NCBI GenBank assembly: GCA_029953675.1 | Contig: JAMWBK010000009.1 | Span: 248,001 to 312,000 of the forward strand | DNA length: 64,000 nucleotides | Direction: 5' to 3' | Source: Rhodosorus marinus CCMP1338 | Lineage: Eukaryota; Plantae; Rhodophyta | Shown: one piece after another, positions 4,092-20,919 of the stretch | Layout: the number at the start of each line of letters is the position of its first letter | Position numbering within the stretch: position 1 is the first letter of the stretch | Notes under the pieces: generated by a model | Database searches by the model: none | What the model was told of the DNA's origin: nothing | The model's input: only the letters and a program-made list of their open reading frames with translations | Position numbers and translations under genes: made by a program

Positions 4092-4928
4092 TATTCTGTT
4101 GCGTACAATGTTTGACTCTTTTTTATGCGTCATATATGATTTCAATCTATTTATATGGTTATGGTGAATATTATTACTTCAATCAAGTTTATCTAGAATT
4201 TGTAGATTGAATTAGGGTGACATATTTAGGGGGCATGGGATTTTTTTCTTGGCCTGTGGAGAAATTCGTTGAACCAGCAGAAGTGGGTCGTCTGAGGGGT
4301 AAGCAGCAACATCGCTTACCTCAGCGGTATTCTTTTATTGCAGAAGAAATATCAATGCGTGCTGTCGTGTATCTACTGCACCGTTTTTTACCTTGGAAGA
4401 ATAGAGTATAATCAATCACCATACTTAATTTACATAAATATTATATAATAAAAACACTATACCACTGTAAAATTGCCTTCCGTGTTCGCTTACAGAATAT
4501 TTATATAGTATATTTGATCAAATTCAGAAATTAATTTTAAATATTCATCAACAAGACCGATTTATGATATATTTATATTGAGTTTATGAATAAACGAGTG
4601 GCGTTTCACCATAGCGAGTCGCGTTTCGCGGGGTGACGGAAAGATTCAGCAAAACTGGGTTCAAATAGCTGGACAAGGTGAGGGAGAGTGAAGACATTTC
4701 TCTCGGGGCTTGACTGTTGATGGGGTGAGGAAAGGTTGTGCGAAGGCCCAAGTTCTGTGGTTTGCTGTCTTTGGAATCAGTAGAGGGTTCGGCGGACTCT
4801 TTGGGTTACATATATATATATATATATGTATATATTGATGTATATGTCTATGTGAAGAGAGCGGTTTCGAGGATGGGCAATTGAATTGGGTGTGGTTGGG
4901 AAGATGAATGTAGCTATGTATTAAGCAT

Positions 4929-5458
4929 GTGGACGGGGTACCCGAGAAGGCGAAGATGTGGACTCCAAGCTTTTTGATTTTGACCTGTGGGGATGTATGC
5001 ACAGTAGTCATGGCGCTATTCTTGATGGCGGCGTTGTCTAGAATACCGGGTTCGTGTAAGGGGGAGGGAACCCACCGAATGTTGAAGTACTTCTGCGTAA
5101 CTGGGGCAGAAACAGATGAGAAGGCGGAGGAGTACCTGGATATGGAGGAAGATGTAGGGTCTATCCGGAGAACATGTTGTCCCCCCCGAAGACGATTGAA
5201 GTAGGGCAGCAGGGAGCGTTCCTTTGGGACCGCGTCGATTTCAGAAATGGACACGGATTATTTCTTCCGAGAGTTTTAACTGGCTACCTTCGGGAGTTTG
5301 AATGGAGAAAACCGCGCGTACTCCTTGTATATGGGAGGGAGCCGTCTGCTAAGGAAACAATAAGCTGGGACACTGGGGAGATATCACCCTTTCCAAAGCG
5401 TGTCACCAAGCGAGACCTGAAACCCAACTGCCGAGTCAGGCAACTGTATTTACAATGA
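4929..5458 (+). CDS. Hypothetical protein or pseudogene (two overlapping frames)
   Basis: ORFs 4929-5204 and 5174-5458 follow a G/T-rich leader like those ahead of clear genes here. No family recognised. Confidence 0.3.
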
Positions 5459-16917: not shown

Positions 16918-18113
16918 ATGTCAGTGCGAGCTGCTGCCCCTCATCGAGGGAGCGAGTTCCGAATTTCTCTTTTCCAGACCGCTGCAGGCGTGAAGTTTCT
17001 GGAGGAGTTGCGGGGTTTTTCGAGCCATGCAGCTGAAATACAAGCAAAACAGTTCACTTGGCCTCGTGTCCGGTCTGTGCTGCAGCGGTCGGCCATTTGC
17101 AGCGCTGCTTCAGGTGCCACCTTCTATGCATCCGCGACCGCGATGCAAGGCCTCTTTGGTGGCCTGTTCCGAGTTTCAGCTTCAACCCCGGTGCTTGCTC
17201 CAGTATGTGGAGGAGTCGCTTTCATAATATCGGCGCTCAGCGCTGATCTCGCCGCGAGGACCTGCATCAAGATCTTCTTCACACATGCGAAACCTCAGCC
17301 CGAGCGTAGAAAGCGGAAGGTAGACCCCTCCCGAGACCATGCACTTTTTTTCACGAAGCTTGGACCCAATTGTTCCTTTGACAGATAAGTTGACCATCAT
17401 AGCACTCTTCCAACTTTAAACAGAGGCGAAAGCAACCTGAGACCACTTCTCAGCAGCCAGTGAAAGTCAATCCAATTGTGCCAGTGGCAGTATCTTTTGG
17501 GATGTTTTTGCTTCTTGGTAAGGATGCAGTACTGCAGACAAGGCAAGCACAACACTTGTATTCACGGTAATGGAGTCGTACATGCGTACATGTTGCAGGG
17601 GGAAGGTTGAGATCATTCCTTCCGAGTAATGTCCTCAAGCCAGGCGCTTTCCATCGGCGCCTTGGTTCGATTTCGGGCAGCTCTCAGTACGCCTCGAAAG
17701 CGGGGAAGGAACTGACTCAGGAGCATGGCGCCGCCTTCGGGTGCCACACATGCGGTAAGATGTACTGCCAATTTGCACTGCAGATTTGACAGAGGGTGGA
17801 CCCAGCTGAAAAGCCTGCTGATTGTCCGTGGGGTGCATTCACAATGGAAGGTATCGTTCGCAGCCAGTTCTGGGCAGACCATATGCCACCGAAGGCCGTC
17901 GTCGCCGCTAGAGCCAAGGGCTGGGCTAGGAAGTTTTTCGAGTCCCGTCGTGTCAATTATCGGATGTATCCTCAATGCCGACCATGCTCAAGCATCCAAT
18001 CTGCTACAATACTACGCAAGTCCAGGAAGCTCATCTACCACTACAACGTGCTACGACGGTATCACCTAACCGGGCTGAGCGTTGGCCTCATGCAATCGCT
18101 ATTCCCCCAATAA
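16918..18113 (+). CDS. Membrane protein with HNH/His-Me-finger-like domain (CxxC-DH-CxxC); possible mitochondrial presequence
   Basis: Four exons give hydrophobic helices, then GGRLRSFLPSNVLKPGAF, GCHTCG, FWADHMPP and YPQCRPCSSIQ. N-terminus is Arg/Ser/Ala-rich with LRGFSS. Confidence 0.7.
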
Positions 18114-18342: not shown

Positions 18343-18861
18343 TCACTGGGCAAATAAGCTCCGCTGGCTTGTCTTCGCGATGCTGCTGTGCTGGGGAATG
18401 ATTGGATACGGAGAGCTCTTCCACATATCAATTTCCTCGAAAAGCAGCTTCATCTCGATCTTGCCCACGCTCTGCATGTCCGCATCCCGTAGAGTATGTA
18501 GGCCCTTTATCTTCTTTTTTGTCCGCAATTGACTCATATTCACACAAATAATCCCAAGGAAAATATCGCGCCCGAAGGCTACCTTCTCCCACAAGGCCAG
18601 GCTAATCTTGTCCACTTCTCCACACATCATATAGTCCATCTTCCTCTCGTACACTGGGTCCTCACCCTTCTTGGCTTTGGTGGATCCAATAGACTGTCCG
18701 TCAACCTTGACCTCAATATAAGTGCTTCCACGTGTTGTGGTCGGTAGGAGACCTTTCCCCCGCACAATCCGCACATGCAGATGCCCGCTAACACCCACCA
18801 TCCCTGGTCTCCCCGCTTGACAACTAACCATCTCACCCGCCTGCCCTCGCCACTTGCTCAT
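18343..18861 (-). CDS. C2-domain protein
   Basis: GHLHVRIVRGKGL...YIEVKV...STKAKKGEDPVY...LALWEK...DIFLG; start codon uncertain. Confidence 0.8.
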   Translation of the reverse strand: MSKWRGQAGEMVSCQAGRPGMVGVSGHLHVRIVRGKGLLPTTTRGSTYIEVKVDGQSIGSTKAKKGEDPVYERKMDYMMCGEVDKISLALWEKVAFGRDIFLGIICVNMSQLRTKKKIKGLHTLRDADMQSVGKIEMKLLFEEIDMWKSSPYPIIPQHSSIAKTSQRSLFAQ

Positions 18862-20919
18862 CGCCCTCTCCGCTTCATGCTCATGTACTTCTGTTCTCCC
18901 AGCGGCCGTCGACTTTATAAAAACAACTATCGGCAGAGTCCTCCAAGCAAAATCTGGCACGGGAAACTCGAAACCCTCCACCTCCCAAGGTGCAAATCCA
19001 GTCCTCGCAACATTGAAAAAAGTACAATTTCGCAAAAGATTTTTTCTTCAAAAGTAAGATAGCACTGAACAGCGCAGACTCCGTCAAAATCCCAAAAATG
19101 CATGTGTACCAATCTACCAGTTGACCTCTCTCAGCACCACTCCAAACGATCATTCCGTGACTACCCCTCGAACCTCATCTACTCGAAACCAACCCACCCC
19201 CCCCCCTTTTGTGTCTGAACATTTTCGCTTCAATTTATCCCGGAAAATGCCCCCGTGTAAGCAATTGAAGACGAAACAAAACTCCTCACGATATTATCCA
19301 CTTTTCAGTTTATTTCGCTGGAGACAAAATTTGGCCAATTTTCCCCCCCCCCATATTCCGGAGCTCATTTCAAAAGGAAACCAAAAAAAGCAAGACACAA
19401 TCTCTTTCTCCAGCCCATCGACCCTCATTGAATAAGAAATTAACAGCTTTCCAGATTCTATCCCCCCCTAAAACCCCTCCCCCCCCCACCCCGCTATGAA
19501 ATCTGTTCCGTTTTCCTCTCATTCTTCACAACTCGCTAAGCAAGGGGCACCATTCTGCATATTCATGTGCTACGAAAATTCCCCCTGATCAATTTTTTTT
19601 TCGTCCAAAGAATTTCGCCTGATCCTGAGGAGGGGGGTGGTGGGGGAATTACACTGAAAATGTCCAGAAATATATAAGAATTAAGATTTTTCCGTACTTA
19701 CAAATAATTTATGCAGCATGGGCTCTCTTCGATGAAGGAAGCCCATGCTTCTAACATCCCCCGCCCACACCCCTCCCTCGGAAAACAATTCTCTTTTAAG
19801 AAAACGCAAAAAAGAAAATCATATTCTATCGAGAAAAACTTTGAAGGAGAATATAGTAATAAACAAGAAGAGCGTTTCGGAGAAGATACGTCAGTATTTC
19901 TATTCATATTTACTTTTTTATCTGATAATGGGCTGGTGCGATTCTGCCAAAACGTGTCCAAGGGGTTATCCACAAATTGGGACGTACTAAAGACTAAAAC
20001 TTCCAAAGTTTTTGCAAGGGTTGCACTGTCCCTAAACGGATTTTTGCACGCTTTGGTGACGGGGCCCAGTTTGGATTTGTGATATCACCCGCTTACTTAT
20101 AGGCTCATTTTTTTTAGTGTTTTCCAACTGTTTTTTCCTGACAATAATCCGAACGAGCGCGTGAAAAAGCGAGGACATGCGAAGAGTAATCGTATTTGCG
20201 GGATGATAAATATCAGAAATCGTTGATTTTTCTTGATGCGCGATCTAGACTCTGGCCAGCTCTATTTCAAGGGCGCCTAATCCTCCAGAAGCAGCGTTCC
20301 AAGTCTGAGACATATCGCCGGATGTATATACGGTATCATACGCTTAATACCGTCCCACGGCGCAATAAAACAAATATTTTATGCTCAAAAACTTCTAGTG
20401 CTTCTCAACTACGACGTATTCACTTCCAAGCGGATATTTTGTTGCCCAATTTTAGTGCCGATCTCGTAATTTAAGAGCGTTGATATATTCCGAGATCGTC
20501 CACCAAAATTAGCATATTGGTAAATCGAGGCGTCCCGCATTCCCATCGAGTATTTTTCGAGGATTCACTTCATCTGTTAGTTGAGCAAGCCATATACTCG
20601 TAGTATTAAAAGTAGAAGAAAAAAACTCCCCTCCGCACCGTTCATTGGACAATAGCTGCAGACAAAAACTTAATTGCACACTATTTCCATGGATCTTTGG
20701 GAAAAGTCCAAAATCAAACCATTTTGCTCCAATAATCACGCTGTACTCCGGGGAAAGAGGCTCACGAGTCTAGCTCACTAAATATCTACAGCCAATCATC
20801 TACCGGGCAACCGGCATTGAATTCTTTTTTTTCCTATTTTTAATTTCCGGCGCGCCTAGCTCAAGGATGTGAGATCTGACGTAATCCAGGCAGGACAAAC
20901 TTCACGAATATATTTCGAT

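What the first reader, a model, noticed from the sequence alone, without database searches (positions are those of the whole stretch)
16918..18113. Intron-containing membrane protein carrying a polymorphic-toxin-like HNH finger
Seen: GCHTCG (17739), ADHMPP (about 17875) and YPQCRPCSSIQ (about 17970) behind several hydrophobic helices and a presequence-like N-terminus. From memory, the pattern GCHTCG..DHxPP..YPxCxxCS occurs in bacterial Rhs toxin tips of the His-Me nuclease fold. Inference: a domesticated, possibly horizontally acquired nuclease anchored in the mitochondrial membrane, of unknown role (organelle DNA turnover, inheritance or defence).
Basis: partly seen in the sequence, partly recalled or inferred. 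Interest (0 to 1): 0.7.

Follow-up and report, generated by a model that had tools for sequence, protein, structure and literature searches.

The report
Membrane-anchored toxin-derived HNH nuclease gene
This red-alga gene encodes a membrane protein whose zinc-finger nuclease-like domain, hydrophobic helices included, descends from the tips of bacterial Rhs/polymorphic toxins; comparative genomics named this family in 2011-2012, but nobody has tested what it does in eukaryotes.

Summary
A four-exon gene (16918-18113, + strand, three GT-AG introns) encodes a 304-aa protein identical to Rhodosorus marinus NDN08_006516. All three motifs lie at the stated positions.

The toxin link is confirmed. 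The protein belongs to a large eukaryotic family: 1486 representative clusters, including oomycetes, diatoms, brown algae, Plasmodium and Nematostella. No Pfam model covers it. The same domain ends bacterial polymorphic toxins, after RHS repeats or a pretoxin-HINT domain, with immunity-like genes downstream. In two Rhs proteins the match also covers the N-terminal hydrophobic helices.

HNH membership rests on four points:
- weak but consistent hits to phage HNH families, which vanish in a Cys-fixed shuffle;
- a 92.8% profile-profile match to bona fide Pfam HNH proteins;
- a treble-clef strand-strand-helix order in a confident AlphaFold model;
- invariant CxxC, DH, CxxC and Q.

That signature, the toxin context and the eukaryotic spread match the "NGO1392-like / Tox-SuFu-Nuc" clade (Zhang et al. 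2011, 2012). So this is a new member of a known but uncharacterised kind.

Mitochondrial targeting is not supported as a family trait. Recent transfer into this alga is unlikely. Nuclease activity and cellular role remain inferred.

The parts
16918..17319 (+). Exon 1 (codons 1-134). It encodes the variable N-terminal region (residues 1-47, low pLDDT) and the two long hydrophobic, Gly/Ala/Ser-rich helices H1 (48-83) and H2 (93-121).
   Evidence: Gene model, identical to the NCBI protein. Helices from the AlphaFold model. Hydrophobicity. Conserved F69, Q77, R85, S87 and G98.
17320..17423 (+). Intron 1, 104 nt, GT...AG, phase 0.
17424..17517 (+). Exon 2. It encodes the basic linker (RRKRKRRK..., net charge +8) and the third hydrophobic helix H3 (about 147-166).
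17518..17598 (+). Intron 2, 81 nt, GT...AG, phase 1.
17599..17754 (+). Exon 3. It encodes the conserved lead-in of the toxin-type domain (GGRLRS..PS..PGAF..A..YA..) and the first zinc knuckle GCHTCG (C214, H215, C217; codons 17742-17753).
   Evidence: Invariant or >=90% columns G166, G167, P174, S175, G181, A192, A197, G209, G213, C214, H215, C217, G218. The same motifs occur in bacterial toxin tips.
17755..17850 (+). Intron 3, 96 nt, GT...AG, phase 1. It splits the last Gly codon of GCHTCG.
   Evidence: The junction is confirmed by transcript-derived protein P0192.
17851..18113 (+). Exon 4. It encodes strand 1 with the catalytic-type D227-H228 (ADHMPP, 17874-17891) and a 24-residue helical insert. 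It also encodes strand 2 and the helix carrying the second zinc pair C260/C263, then S264 and the invariant Q267 (YPQCRPCSSIQ, 17967-17999). The conserved H281, R286 and H289, the C-terminal helix and the stop codon (18111-18113) follow.
   Evidence: Secondary structure from the model: strand 224-229, strand 254-260, helix 261-273. Invariant columns. The profile-profile comparison aligns CxxC, DH and CxxC to Pfam-HNH proteins.

Best explanation
The gene encodes a eukaryotic, domesticated member of the NGO1392-like (Tox-SuFu-Nuc) clade of HNH/EndoVII nucleases, a clade that arose as the C-terminal tip of bacterial polymorphic toxins.

Shown:
- The protein has three hydrophobic helices followed by a strongly basic domain of about 120 residues (net charge +15).
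- In that domain, a CxxC knuckle (C214/C217) and a CxxC at the start of a helix (C260/C263) have the spacing and order of a treble-clef zinc site.
- Asp-His (D227-H228) sits in the strand before the hairpin, and an invariant Gln (Q267) lies one turn into the helix.
- The whole architecture, helices included, is homologous to the tips of bacterial Rhs proteins.
- The gene is spliced and expressed, and it belongs to a large family spread across eukaryotic supergroups.

Inferred:
- The four Cys bind structural zinc.
- H228 acts as the general base.
- D227 with Q267 (or S264) holds the catalytic divalent metal, as D40 and N62 do in T4 endonuclease VII (from memory of that structure).
- The enzyme therefore cuts nucleic acid while tethered to a membrane by the N-terminal helices.
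- With three membrane passes, the basic domain would face the cytosol-like side, by the positive-inside rule.

Which membrane it sits in and which substrate it cuts are unknown. Candidate substrates are organelle, nuclear-envelope or foreign DNA or RNA. My working guess is membrane-proximal DNA cleavage in housekeeping or repair/turnover rather than a toxin role. The reason is that the family is single-copy here, intron-bearing and evenly conserved.
For: - Gene model and expression.
- Family size and spread: one search found 1486 clusters at E<=1e-3. name Rhodosorus, Albugo, Pythium, Lagenidium, Phytophthora, Ascophyllum, the diatoms Odontella and Leptocylindrus, Plasmodium malariae and Nematostella.
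- Invariant residues: C214, H215, C217, D227, H228, P230, C260 and Q267.
- Structure: AlphaFold model with pLDDT 86.6 and pTM 0.80, showing knuckle, strand 224-229, strand 254-260 and helix 261-273 in that order.
- HNH similarity in PHROGs: HNH, NinG/Rap and EndoVII families dominate the hits for 20 family domains. The best E is 5.9e-4, and the matches span CxxC..DH..CxxC. No such hit appears when the same sequences are shuffled with the Cys residues fixed.
- HNH similarity by hhalign: the family domain against 22 small bacterial proteins that are Pfam HNH (E 5e-14) gives probability 92.8% and E 4e-7, with CxxC, DH and CxxC aligned.
- Bacterial toxin tips: the family HMM hits Rhs proteins L013 (2e-45, profile positions 7-229) and L004 (6e-44, positions 10-228; RHS_repeat E 1e-18). 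It hits domain-only tips after PT-HINT in Streptomyces, Thermoactinomyces and Chloroflexota.
- Immunity-like genes: DUF7003 and SUFU lie downstream.
- Literature: the signature 'CxxC, DH, CXXC, Q', the RHS/HINT context, Imm-SuFu and the eukaryotic distribution are those listed for the NGO1392-like clade (PMC3482391 and PMC3113570).
- Charge: the domain has a net charge of +11 at the family median and +15 here.
Against: - No Pfam HNH-clan model reaches significance on any member. The best is HNH_5 at E 0.06 on one bacterial tip.
- Foldseek with the whole 304-aa model found nothing in the PDB or BFVD. I could not cut the model to the domain or inspect coordinates, so the strand-strand-helix geometry and the zinc and active-site geometry are not verified in 3D.
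- The canonical metal-binding Asn/His right after the second CxxC is Ser here, and it varies in the bacterial tips.
- The HNH set used for hhalign was picked by the same DNA pattern, which inflates that score.
- No nuclease activity has been shown for any member of this clade, bacterial or eukaryotic.
- A domain joined closely to three membrane helices is unusual for a DNA enzyme.
- Direct comparison with NGO1392 itself was not done.
Confidence: 0.75

Rival explanations
1. The domain is a catalytically dead treble-clef zinc finger kept as a binding module for nucleic acid, lipid headgroups or protein on a membrane protein. Precedents from my own knowledge and from the literature read here are the MH1 domain of Smads and the teneurin Tox-GHH domain, both His-Me derivatives without nuclease function.
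For: Ser replaces the usual Asn/His after the second CxxC. No Pfam HNH model matches. The very basic domain next to the membrane could bind acidic lipids. Zhang et al. list eukaryotic Tox-GHH copies that have lost the catalytic histidines, which is a precedent.
Against: D227, H228 and Q267 are invariant in 83 diverse eukaryotic members and are retained in bacterial tips that must be toxic. They are exactly the signature residues of the clade. Structural zinc fingers do not need an invariant DH.PP.
Confidence: 0.12
2. One reading: the protein is imported by an N-terminal presequence and anchored in a mitochondrial membrane, where it acts on organelle DNA (turnover, inheritance or defence).
For: The R. 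marinus N-terminus has about 49 residues before the first conserved helix, with 3 basic and 1 acidic residues in the first 25. Rhodosorus has unusual minicircular mitochondrial DNA (PMC10250338, listed, not read further).
Against: The N-terminal extension is not conserved: its median is 15.5 residues, and 49% of 190 full-length members have fewer than 15. Only 7% have an acid-free, basic first 25 residues. Residues 1-60 here hold 4 acidic residues. No targeting predictor or localisation data were available.
Confidence: 0.15
3. The gene is a recent bacterial acquisition or assembly contaminant that still acts as a toxin or selfish element.
For: The closest non-eukaryotic relatives are bacterial polymorphic-toxin tips, with full-length similarity at E about 1e-44.
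Against: The gene has three GT-AG introns and lies on a 1.83-Mb contig. A transcript from another strain is spliced the same way. The nearest relatives by distance are eukaryotic, and relatives occur in several eukaryotic supergroups. The window holds no second copy and no immunity-gene homologue.
Confidence: 0.02

Closest known systems
NGO1392-like HNH/EndoVII clade (Tox-SuFu-Nuc) of polymorphic toxin systems (Zhang, Iyer & Aravind 2011, PMC3113570; Zhang et al. 2012, PMC3482391)
   Same: The signature is the same: CxxC, DH, CxxC, Q. The bacterial copies are C-terminal tips behind RHS repeats or pretoxin-HINT domains, and one locus has a SuFu-type immunity gene. The eukaryotic copies occur in apicomplexans, metazoans and stramenopiles. 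The authors had already proposed transfer to eukaryotes and a non-toxin role.
   Different: Red algae were not in the published distribution. The text I could read does not mention membrane helices. Here the three hydrophobic helices are conserved and are shared with some Rhs tips. DUF7003 as a neighbour is not among the immunity families listed there. I did not make a direct alignment to NGO1392.
Classical HNH endonucleases (Pfam PF01844/PF14279) and T4 endonuclease VII
   Same: The treble-clef order is the same: CxxC, then a strand ending in D-H, then a CxxC at the start of a helix. The profile-profile match is 92.8% with these positions aligned.
   Different: The polar residue after the second CxxC is Ser, with a conserved Gln three residues later, instead of Asn or His. 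A variable helical insert of 12-70 residues separates the two strands. There is a conserved GGR..PS..GAF..YA lead-in, and the domain is fused to membrane helices. No Pfam model detects it.
Teneurin C-terminal Tox-GHH domain, another toxin-tip HNH domesticated in eukaryotic membrane proteins
   Same: It is a bacterial Rhs/YD-type toxin tip of the HNH fold, fixed in a eukaryotic membrane protein.
   Different: It belongs to a different HNH clade. The eukaryotic copies have lost the catalytic histidines, whereas this family keeps every signature residue. The architecture is also different.
EndoG and EXOG (strand-strand-helix metal nucleases of mitochondria; from my own knowledge)
   Same: They are His-Me nucleases of eukaryotes, and EXOG is tethered to a membrane by a helix.
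   Different: They belong to the unrelated NUC/Endonuclease_NS clade and have no CxxC zinc site. I found no sequence relationship here.

Membership tests
HNH/EndoVII (His-Me finger, treble-clef type) superfamily | Two CxxC pairs placed as knuckle and helix start (four-Cys zinc site) | tested here: met
   C214/C217 lie in the loop before strand 224-229. C260/C263 lie at the end of strand 254-260 and the start of helix 261-273. Zinc binding itself is inferred.
HNH/EndoVII (His-Me finger, treble-clef type) superfamily | Catalytic His at the end of the first strand, usually as D-H | tested here: met
   D227-H228 are invariant in 83 sequences and lie inside the predicted strand 224-229. They align to the DH of Pfam-HNH proteins.
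HNH/EndoVII (His-Me finger, treble-clef type) superfamily | Strand-strand-helix metal fold in three dimensions | tested here: inconclusive
   The order of secondary-structure elements fits. Foldseek with the whole model found no match in the PDB or BFVD.
HNH/EndoVII (His-Me finger, treble-clef type) superfamily | Detectable sequence or profile similarity to bona fide HNH proteins | tested here: met
   In PHROGs, at least 10 HNH, NinG/Rap or EndoVII families appear among the hits, with best E 5.9e-4. None appears in the Cys-fixed shuffles. hhalign gives 92.8% and E 4e-7 against proteins that are Pfam HNH at E 5e-14. Caveat: that set was picked by the same DNA pattern.
HNH/EndoVII (His-Me finger, treble-clef type) superfamily | Match to a curated Pfam model of the His-Me clan above its threshold | tested here: not met
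   There was no such hit for 83 full-length or 20 domain-only members at E<=1-10. The best was HNH_5 at E 0.061 on bacterial tip L003.
HNH/EndoVII (His-Me finger, treble-clef type) superfamily | Metal-binding Asn/His/Asp on the helix | tested here: inconclusive
   The position aligned to the HNH Asn is S264, which is >=90% conserved in eukaryotes but variable in bacterial tips. Q267, three residues later, is invariant everywhere. Which residue binds the metal is inferred.
HNH/EndoVII (His-Me finger, treble-clef type) superfamily | Metal-dependent nuclease activity | not testable with these tools
   This needs biochemistry. I found no published assay for any clade member.
NGO1392-like (Tox-SuFu-Nuc) clade | Signature CxxC, DH, CxxC, Q (PMC3482391, Table) | tested here: met
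   C214-x2-C217, D227-H228, C260-x2-C263 and Q267 are all invariant or nearly so. The signature was read.
NGO1392-like (Tox-SuFu-Nuc) clade | Bacterial members are C-terminal tips of polymorphic toxins with RHS repeats or HINT | tested here: met
   L004 has RHS_repeat at E 1e-18 and the tip at the C-terminus. L031 has RHS_repeat, PT-TG, PT-HINT (3e-27) and then the tip. L009 and L019 have PT-HINT and then the tip.
NGO1392-like (Tox-SuFu-Nuc) clade | Association with Imm-SuFu and other immunity genes | tested here: inconclusive
   A SUFU gene (E 2e-27) lies downstream in one locus, L031, but after two DUF7003 genes. DUF7003 directly follows the toxin gene in L004, L013 and L031. Few loci were examined.
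NGO1392-like (Tox-SuFu-Nuc) clade | Eukaryotic members in apicomplexans, metazoans and stramenopiles | tested here: met
   Found in Plasmodium malariae, Nematostella vectensis, oomycetes, diatoms and a brown alga.
NGO1392-like (Tox-SuFu-Nuc) clade | Direct sequence similarity to NGO1392 itself | not tested
   The extension is absent or shorter than 15 residues in 49% of 190 full-length members, and only 7% have a presequence-like composition. For the R. marinus protein alone the question stays open, because no predictor was available.

The most novel reading that the evidence does not exclude
What eukaryotes domesticated was not just the nuclease domain but the entire Rhs toxin tip: the three glycine/alanine-rich helices together with the nuclease. 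In bacteria those helices plausibly carry the nuclease into or across the target cell's membrane. The eukaryotic protein would then be a self-inserting, membrane-resident HNH nuclease with a conserved membrane-surface task that no known eukaryotic nuclease performs. Examples are clearing DNA or RNA at an organelle or nuclear-envelope surface, or acting during organelle division. This would be a role other than the 'DNA repair' guessed in 2011. DUF7003 would be the matching, so far unrecognised, immunity family in bacteria.
Probability: 0.3. Interest if true: 0.65.

Novelty: new member of a known kind. Interest (0 to 1): 0.42.

Why it matters
If active, this is a widely conserved eukaryotic nuclease tethered to a membrane, present from red algae and diatoms to Plasmodium and cnidarians, and it has never been studied at the bench. 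It is a clean example of a bacterial warfare toxin turned into a eukaryotic housekeeping or defence protein. Because the helices came along with the nuclease, it may also show how such toxins enter membranes. The orthologue in malaria parasites ('conserved Plasmodium membrane protein, unknown function') makes its role directly testable.

Tried and rejected
- Pfam scans of the protein, of 83 family members and of 20 domain-only sequences gave no family.
- PDB sequence searches with the protein and with the family profile gave nothing.
- The first AlphaFold run, with a 3-sequence alignment, was useless (pLDDT 39).
- Foldseek with the good whole-length model against the PDB and BFVD gave no match with E<1. 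I do not read this as evidence against a 40-residue His-Me core.
- hhalign of the domain alignment against the single E. coli McrA protein gave probability 1.2%. This was uninformative, because one sequence with a long loop is a poor target.
I replaced it with a degenerate DNA pattern.
- tblastn of a Streptomyces tip and of the alga's domain against 50,697 phage records gave no match. The mycobacteriophage members reported in 2012 could therefore not be used as a cross-check.
- A neighbour-joining tree of 83 eukaryotic and 13 bacterial domains did not separate the two groups, because distances are saturated at 0.61-0.71. It says nothing about the number or direction of transfers.
- Literature searches by motif strings, by DUF7003 and by Plasmodium/Toxoplasma plus HNH found no experimental work.
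- No supplementary alignments of the 2011 and 2012 papers were held.
- Alternative splice models for intron 3 (GCHTCAEKPADC... and GCHTCGKMVDPAEK...) were rejected. The chosen one matches the NCBI protein, the transcript and the family spacing.
- About 24 of the 49 bacterial pattern hits are ordinary small HNH proteins and a few are out-of-frame chance hits. They are not relatives of the family in the narrow sense.

Full report
1. WHAT IS IN THE SEQUENCE

The window is eukaryotic nuclear DNA. Joining four exons on the + strand gives a 304-aa protein. The exons are 16918-17319, 17424-17517, 17599-17754 and 17851-18113. The stop codon is at 18111-18113. The introns are 104, 81 and 96 nt, all GT...AG.

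The protein is 100% identical to 'hypothetical protein NDN08_006516 [Rhodosorus marinus]', which UniRef calls a 'Zinc-binding domain-containing protein', on a 1.83-Mb contig. A transcriptome-derived protein from another R. marinus strain is 88% identical over residues 163-302. It reads through the exon 3/exon 4 junction as modelled, so the gene is spliced and expressed.

The window holds no second copy.

2. A LARGE, UNANNOTATED EUKARYOTIC FAMILY

An exhaustive profile search found 1486 representative clusters at E<=1e-3 and 625 at E<=1e-10. The named members are:
- Albugo, Pythium, Lagenidium and Phytophthora (oomycetes);
- Ascophyllum (a brown alga);
- Odontella and Leptocylindrus (diatoms);
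- Plasmodium malariae ('conserved Plasmodium membrane protein, unknown function');
- the cnidarian Nematostella.

Most other members come from marine metagenomes and transcriptomes.

In an 83-sequence alignment the invariant residues are S175, G181, G213, C214, H215, C217, G218, D227, H228, P230, C260 and Q267. Residues conserved at >=90% include G166, G167, P174, A192, A197, P231, P258, C263, S264, H281, R286 and H289. No Pfam model matches any member, and no PDB sequence does.

3. ARCHITECTURE

With the 83-sequence alignment, AlphaFold gives a confident model (pLDDT 86.6, pTM 0.80). In order along the chain it shows:
- a disordered N-terminus (residues 1-47);
- two long helices (48-83 and 93-121);
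- a low-confidence basic linker;
- a third hydrophobic helix (152-164);
- a compact domain: a short strand, helix 199-212, the CHTC knuckle, strand 224-229 (which carries D227-H228), two short helices, strand 254-260, helix 261-273 (which starts at C260/C263), and a C-terminal helix.

Across the family the three N-terminal helices are TM-like, with Kyte-Doolittle 17-residue maxima of median 1.7, 1.8 and 1.6. The C-terminal helix is not (median 1.1). The domain is very basic, with a net charge of +11 at the family median and +15 here.

The order knuckle, strand with DH, strand, then a helix beginning with CxxC is the treble-clef layout of HNH/EndoVII nucleases. I recognise that layout from established knowledge. 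The 3D geometry was not checked.

4. IS IT AN HNH FINGER?

Evidence for:
- Twenty domain-only members scanned against PHROGs hit mainly families annotated HNH endonuclease, NinG/Rap or endonuclease VII. phrog_2255 was hit by 10 members, 22048 by 5 and 2323 by 3, with best E 5.9e-4.
- For short-loop members, the matches span the whole CxxC..DH..CxxC unit.
- The same eight sequences, shuffled with the Cys residues held in place, gave five hits and none was HNH. The signal is therefore not just Cys spacing.
- A profile of 96 family domains aligned by hhalign to 22 small bacterial proteins gave probability 92.8% and E 4e-7. CxxC, DH and CxxC were in register, and S264 fell opposite the HNH Asn. 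Those bacterial proteins are bona fide Pfam HNH (E 5e-14).

Caveat: these HNH proteins were fished out by the same degenerate pattern, so the score is somewhat circular.

Evidence against or missing:
- No Pfam His-Me model reaches threshold.
- Foldseek with the full-length model found nothing. That result is weak evidence for a core of about 40 residues embedded in 304.
- The polar residue after the second CxxC is Ser, not Asn or His.

5. THE BACTERIAL TOXIN LINK IS REAL

| Locus | Source | E-value | Profile positions matched |
|---|---|---|---|
| L013 | Gammaproteobacteria MAG | 2e-45 | 7-229 |
| L004 | Chloroflexota MAG, ORF of at least 2197 aa | 6e-44 | 10-228 |

Both matches cover the whole eukaryotic architecture, including the glycine/alanine-rich helices. 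In both proteins the match starts just after the '...PLLYTDPSGH' end of the Rhs core. L004 carries RHS repeats (E 1e-18).

Other loci hold the domain alone at the C-terminus, matching profile positions of about 113-220 with E between 1e-11 and 1e-28:
- Thermoactinomyces L031: RHS_repeat, PT-TG, PT-HINT (3e-27), then the domain;
- Chloroflexota L009 and Streptomyces L019: PT-HINT, then the domain;
- L002 and L015: two tandem copies of the domain.

The isolates (Streptomyces, Longispora, Thermoactinomyces) rule out eukaryotic contamination.

Directly downstream, on the same strand, lie DUF7003 genes in L004, L013 and L031. L031 has two of them, followed by a SUFU-family gene. A different conserved family lies downstream in the Streptomyces loci. 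This is the toxin-immunity layout of polymorphic toxin systems. The window contains no homologue of these immunity proteins.

6. WHAT IS ALREADY KNOWN

The table in Zhang et al. [quoted passage not shown] It gives:
- HINT and RHS contexts;
- Imm-SuFu among the immunity proteins;
- eukaryotic members in apicomplexans, choanoflagellates, metazoans, stramenopiles and plants (PMC3482391).

[quoted passage not shown] In 2012 they wrote that the clade arose in bacterial polymorphic toxin systems and was transferred to eukaryotes.

The signature, the context and the distribution all match what I found. I therefore file the gene under this clade, with one reservation: I did not align it to NGO1392 itself.

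I found no experimental study of any member. The Neisseria MafB paper only notes the HNH/EndoVII annotation. Searches by motif, by DUF7003 and by Plasmodium/Toxoplasma gave nothing.

The parts I could not find in the text available to me are:
- the red-algal member;
- the conservation of three membrane helices and their homology to helix-bearing Rhs tips;
- DUF7003 as the adjacent gene.

7. HOW IT MOST LIKELY WORKS

Shown: the fold-level and sequence-level kinship to HNH, the invariance of the signature residues, the membrane-type helices, the basic domain and the expression.

Inferred:
- Four Cys bind a structural zinc.
- H228 activates water.
- D227, with Q267 or S264, holds the catalytic metal.
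- The enzyme cleaves nucleic acid while tethered to a membrane.
- With three membrane passes, the basic domain probably faces the cytosol-like side.

Domain-only bacterial tips with their own immunity genes argue that the domain by itself is the toxic, enzymatic part. In that case the helices would be an entry or anchoring accessory. The eukaryotic role, and which membrane holds the protein, are open.

The N-terminal extension has a median of 15.5 residues. It is shorter than 15 residues in 49% of 190 full-length members, and only 7% look presequence-like. I cannot exclude the proposal for this alga.

A recent transfer or contamination is excluded by the introns, the transcript and the eukaryote-wide spread. 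A neighbour-joining tree was too saturated to say how many transfers occurred.

8. VERDICT

The toxin-tip HNH interpretation is correct and is now backed by tool results. The mitochondrial and 'novel family' parts are not supported.

The gene is a new (red-algal) member of a clade that has been known computationally but has never been characterised experimentally. Interest is moderate. A specialist in toxin-domain evolution would not be surprised. Even so, a conserved membrane-anchored HNH nuclease that is present in Plasmodium and has no known function is a reasonable experimental target.

Noticed in passing
L004:6643-7359 (+). On the reverse-complement strand of each locus: L013 2925-3701; L031 3112-3789 and 3817-4491, followed by SUFU at 4498-5127.: Pfam DUF7003 (PF22535; E 2e-29 to 4e-47) lies directly downstream of the toxin gene in three unrelated bacteria (Chloroflexota, Gammaproteobacteria, Thermoactinomyces). 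This suggests DUF7003 is an immunity protein for this toxin tip. A literature search found no paper that mentions DUF7003.
   Followed up: partly
L004 and L013, about 200 residues between the Rhs core end (...YTDPSGH) and the GGxF..PS motif: The glycine/alanine-rich hydrophobic helices of these Rhs tips align with helices H1-H3 of the eukaryotic family (profile positions 7-110). The membrane module and the nuclease domain therefore travel together in some bacterial toxins as well.
   Followed up: partly
P0006 (Lagenidium giganteum, 1561 aa) and P0007 (Pythium oligandrum, 1711 aa): In two oomycete gene models the family module (residues about 31-290) is joined to a C-terminal HECT ubiquitin-ligase domain (E 1e-32 and 3e-27). 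This may be a true fusion or a merger of conserved neighbouring genes.
   Followed up: no
L002 (Candidatus Solibacter MAG) and L015 (Pseudomonadota MAG): Single bacterial ORFs carry two tandem copies of the toxin-type domain. The L002 ORF also has a very Cys-rich N-terminal region.
   Followed up: no
L019, L041 and L047 (Streptomyces), ORFs just downstream of the toxin tips: A second conserved family of about 235-256 aa, with no Pfam match, lies downstream of the tips (motif ...LAARTRAQVAPV..VW.G...). It is presumably an alternative immunity protein.
   Followed up: no
window 18346-19035 (-): The convergent downstream neighbour encodes a C2-domain protein (Pfam C2, E 3.5e-11). Its ORF ends about 230 nt from the stop codon of the HNH gene, and an A12 run lies in between at about 18260.
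   Followed up: partly
Family alignment A2, positions 215, 281, 286 and 289 of the R. marinus protein: H215, inside the first CxxC knuckle, is invariant. H281, R286 and H289 are >=90% conserved, yet they are not part of the published clade signature. They could form a second metal site or part of the active site. This could not be checked without coordinates.
   Followed up: no
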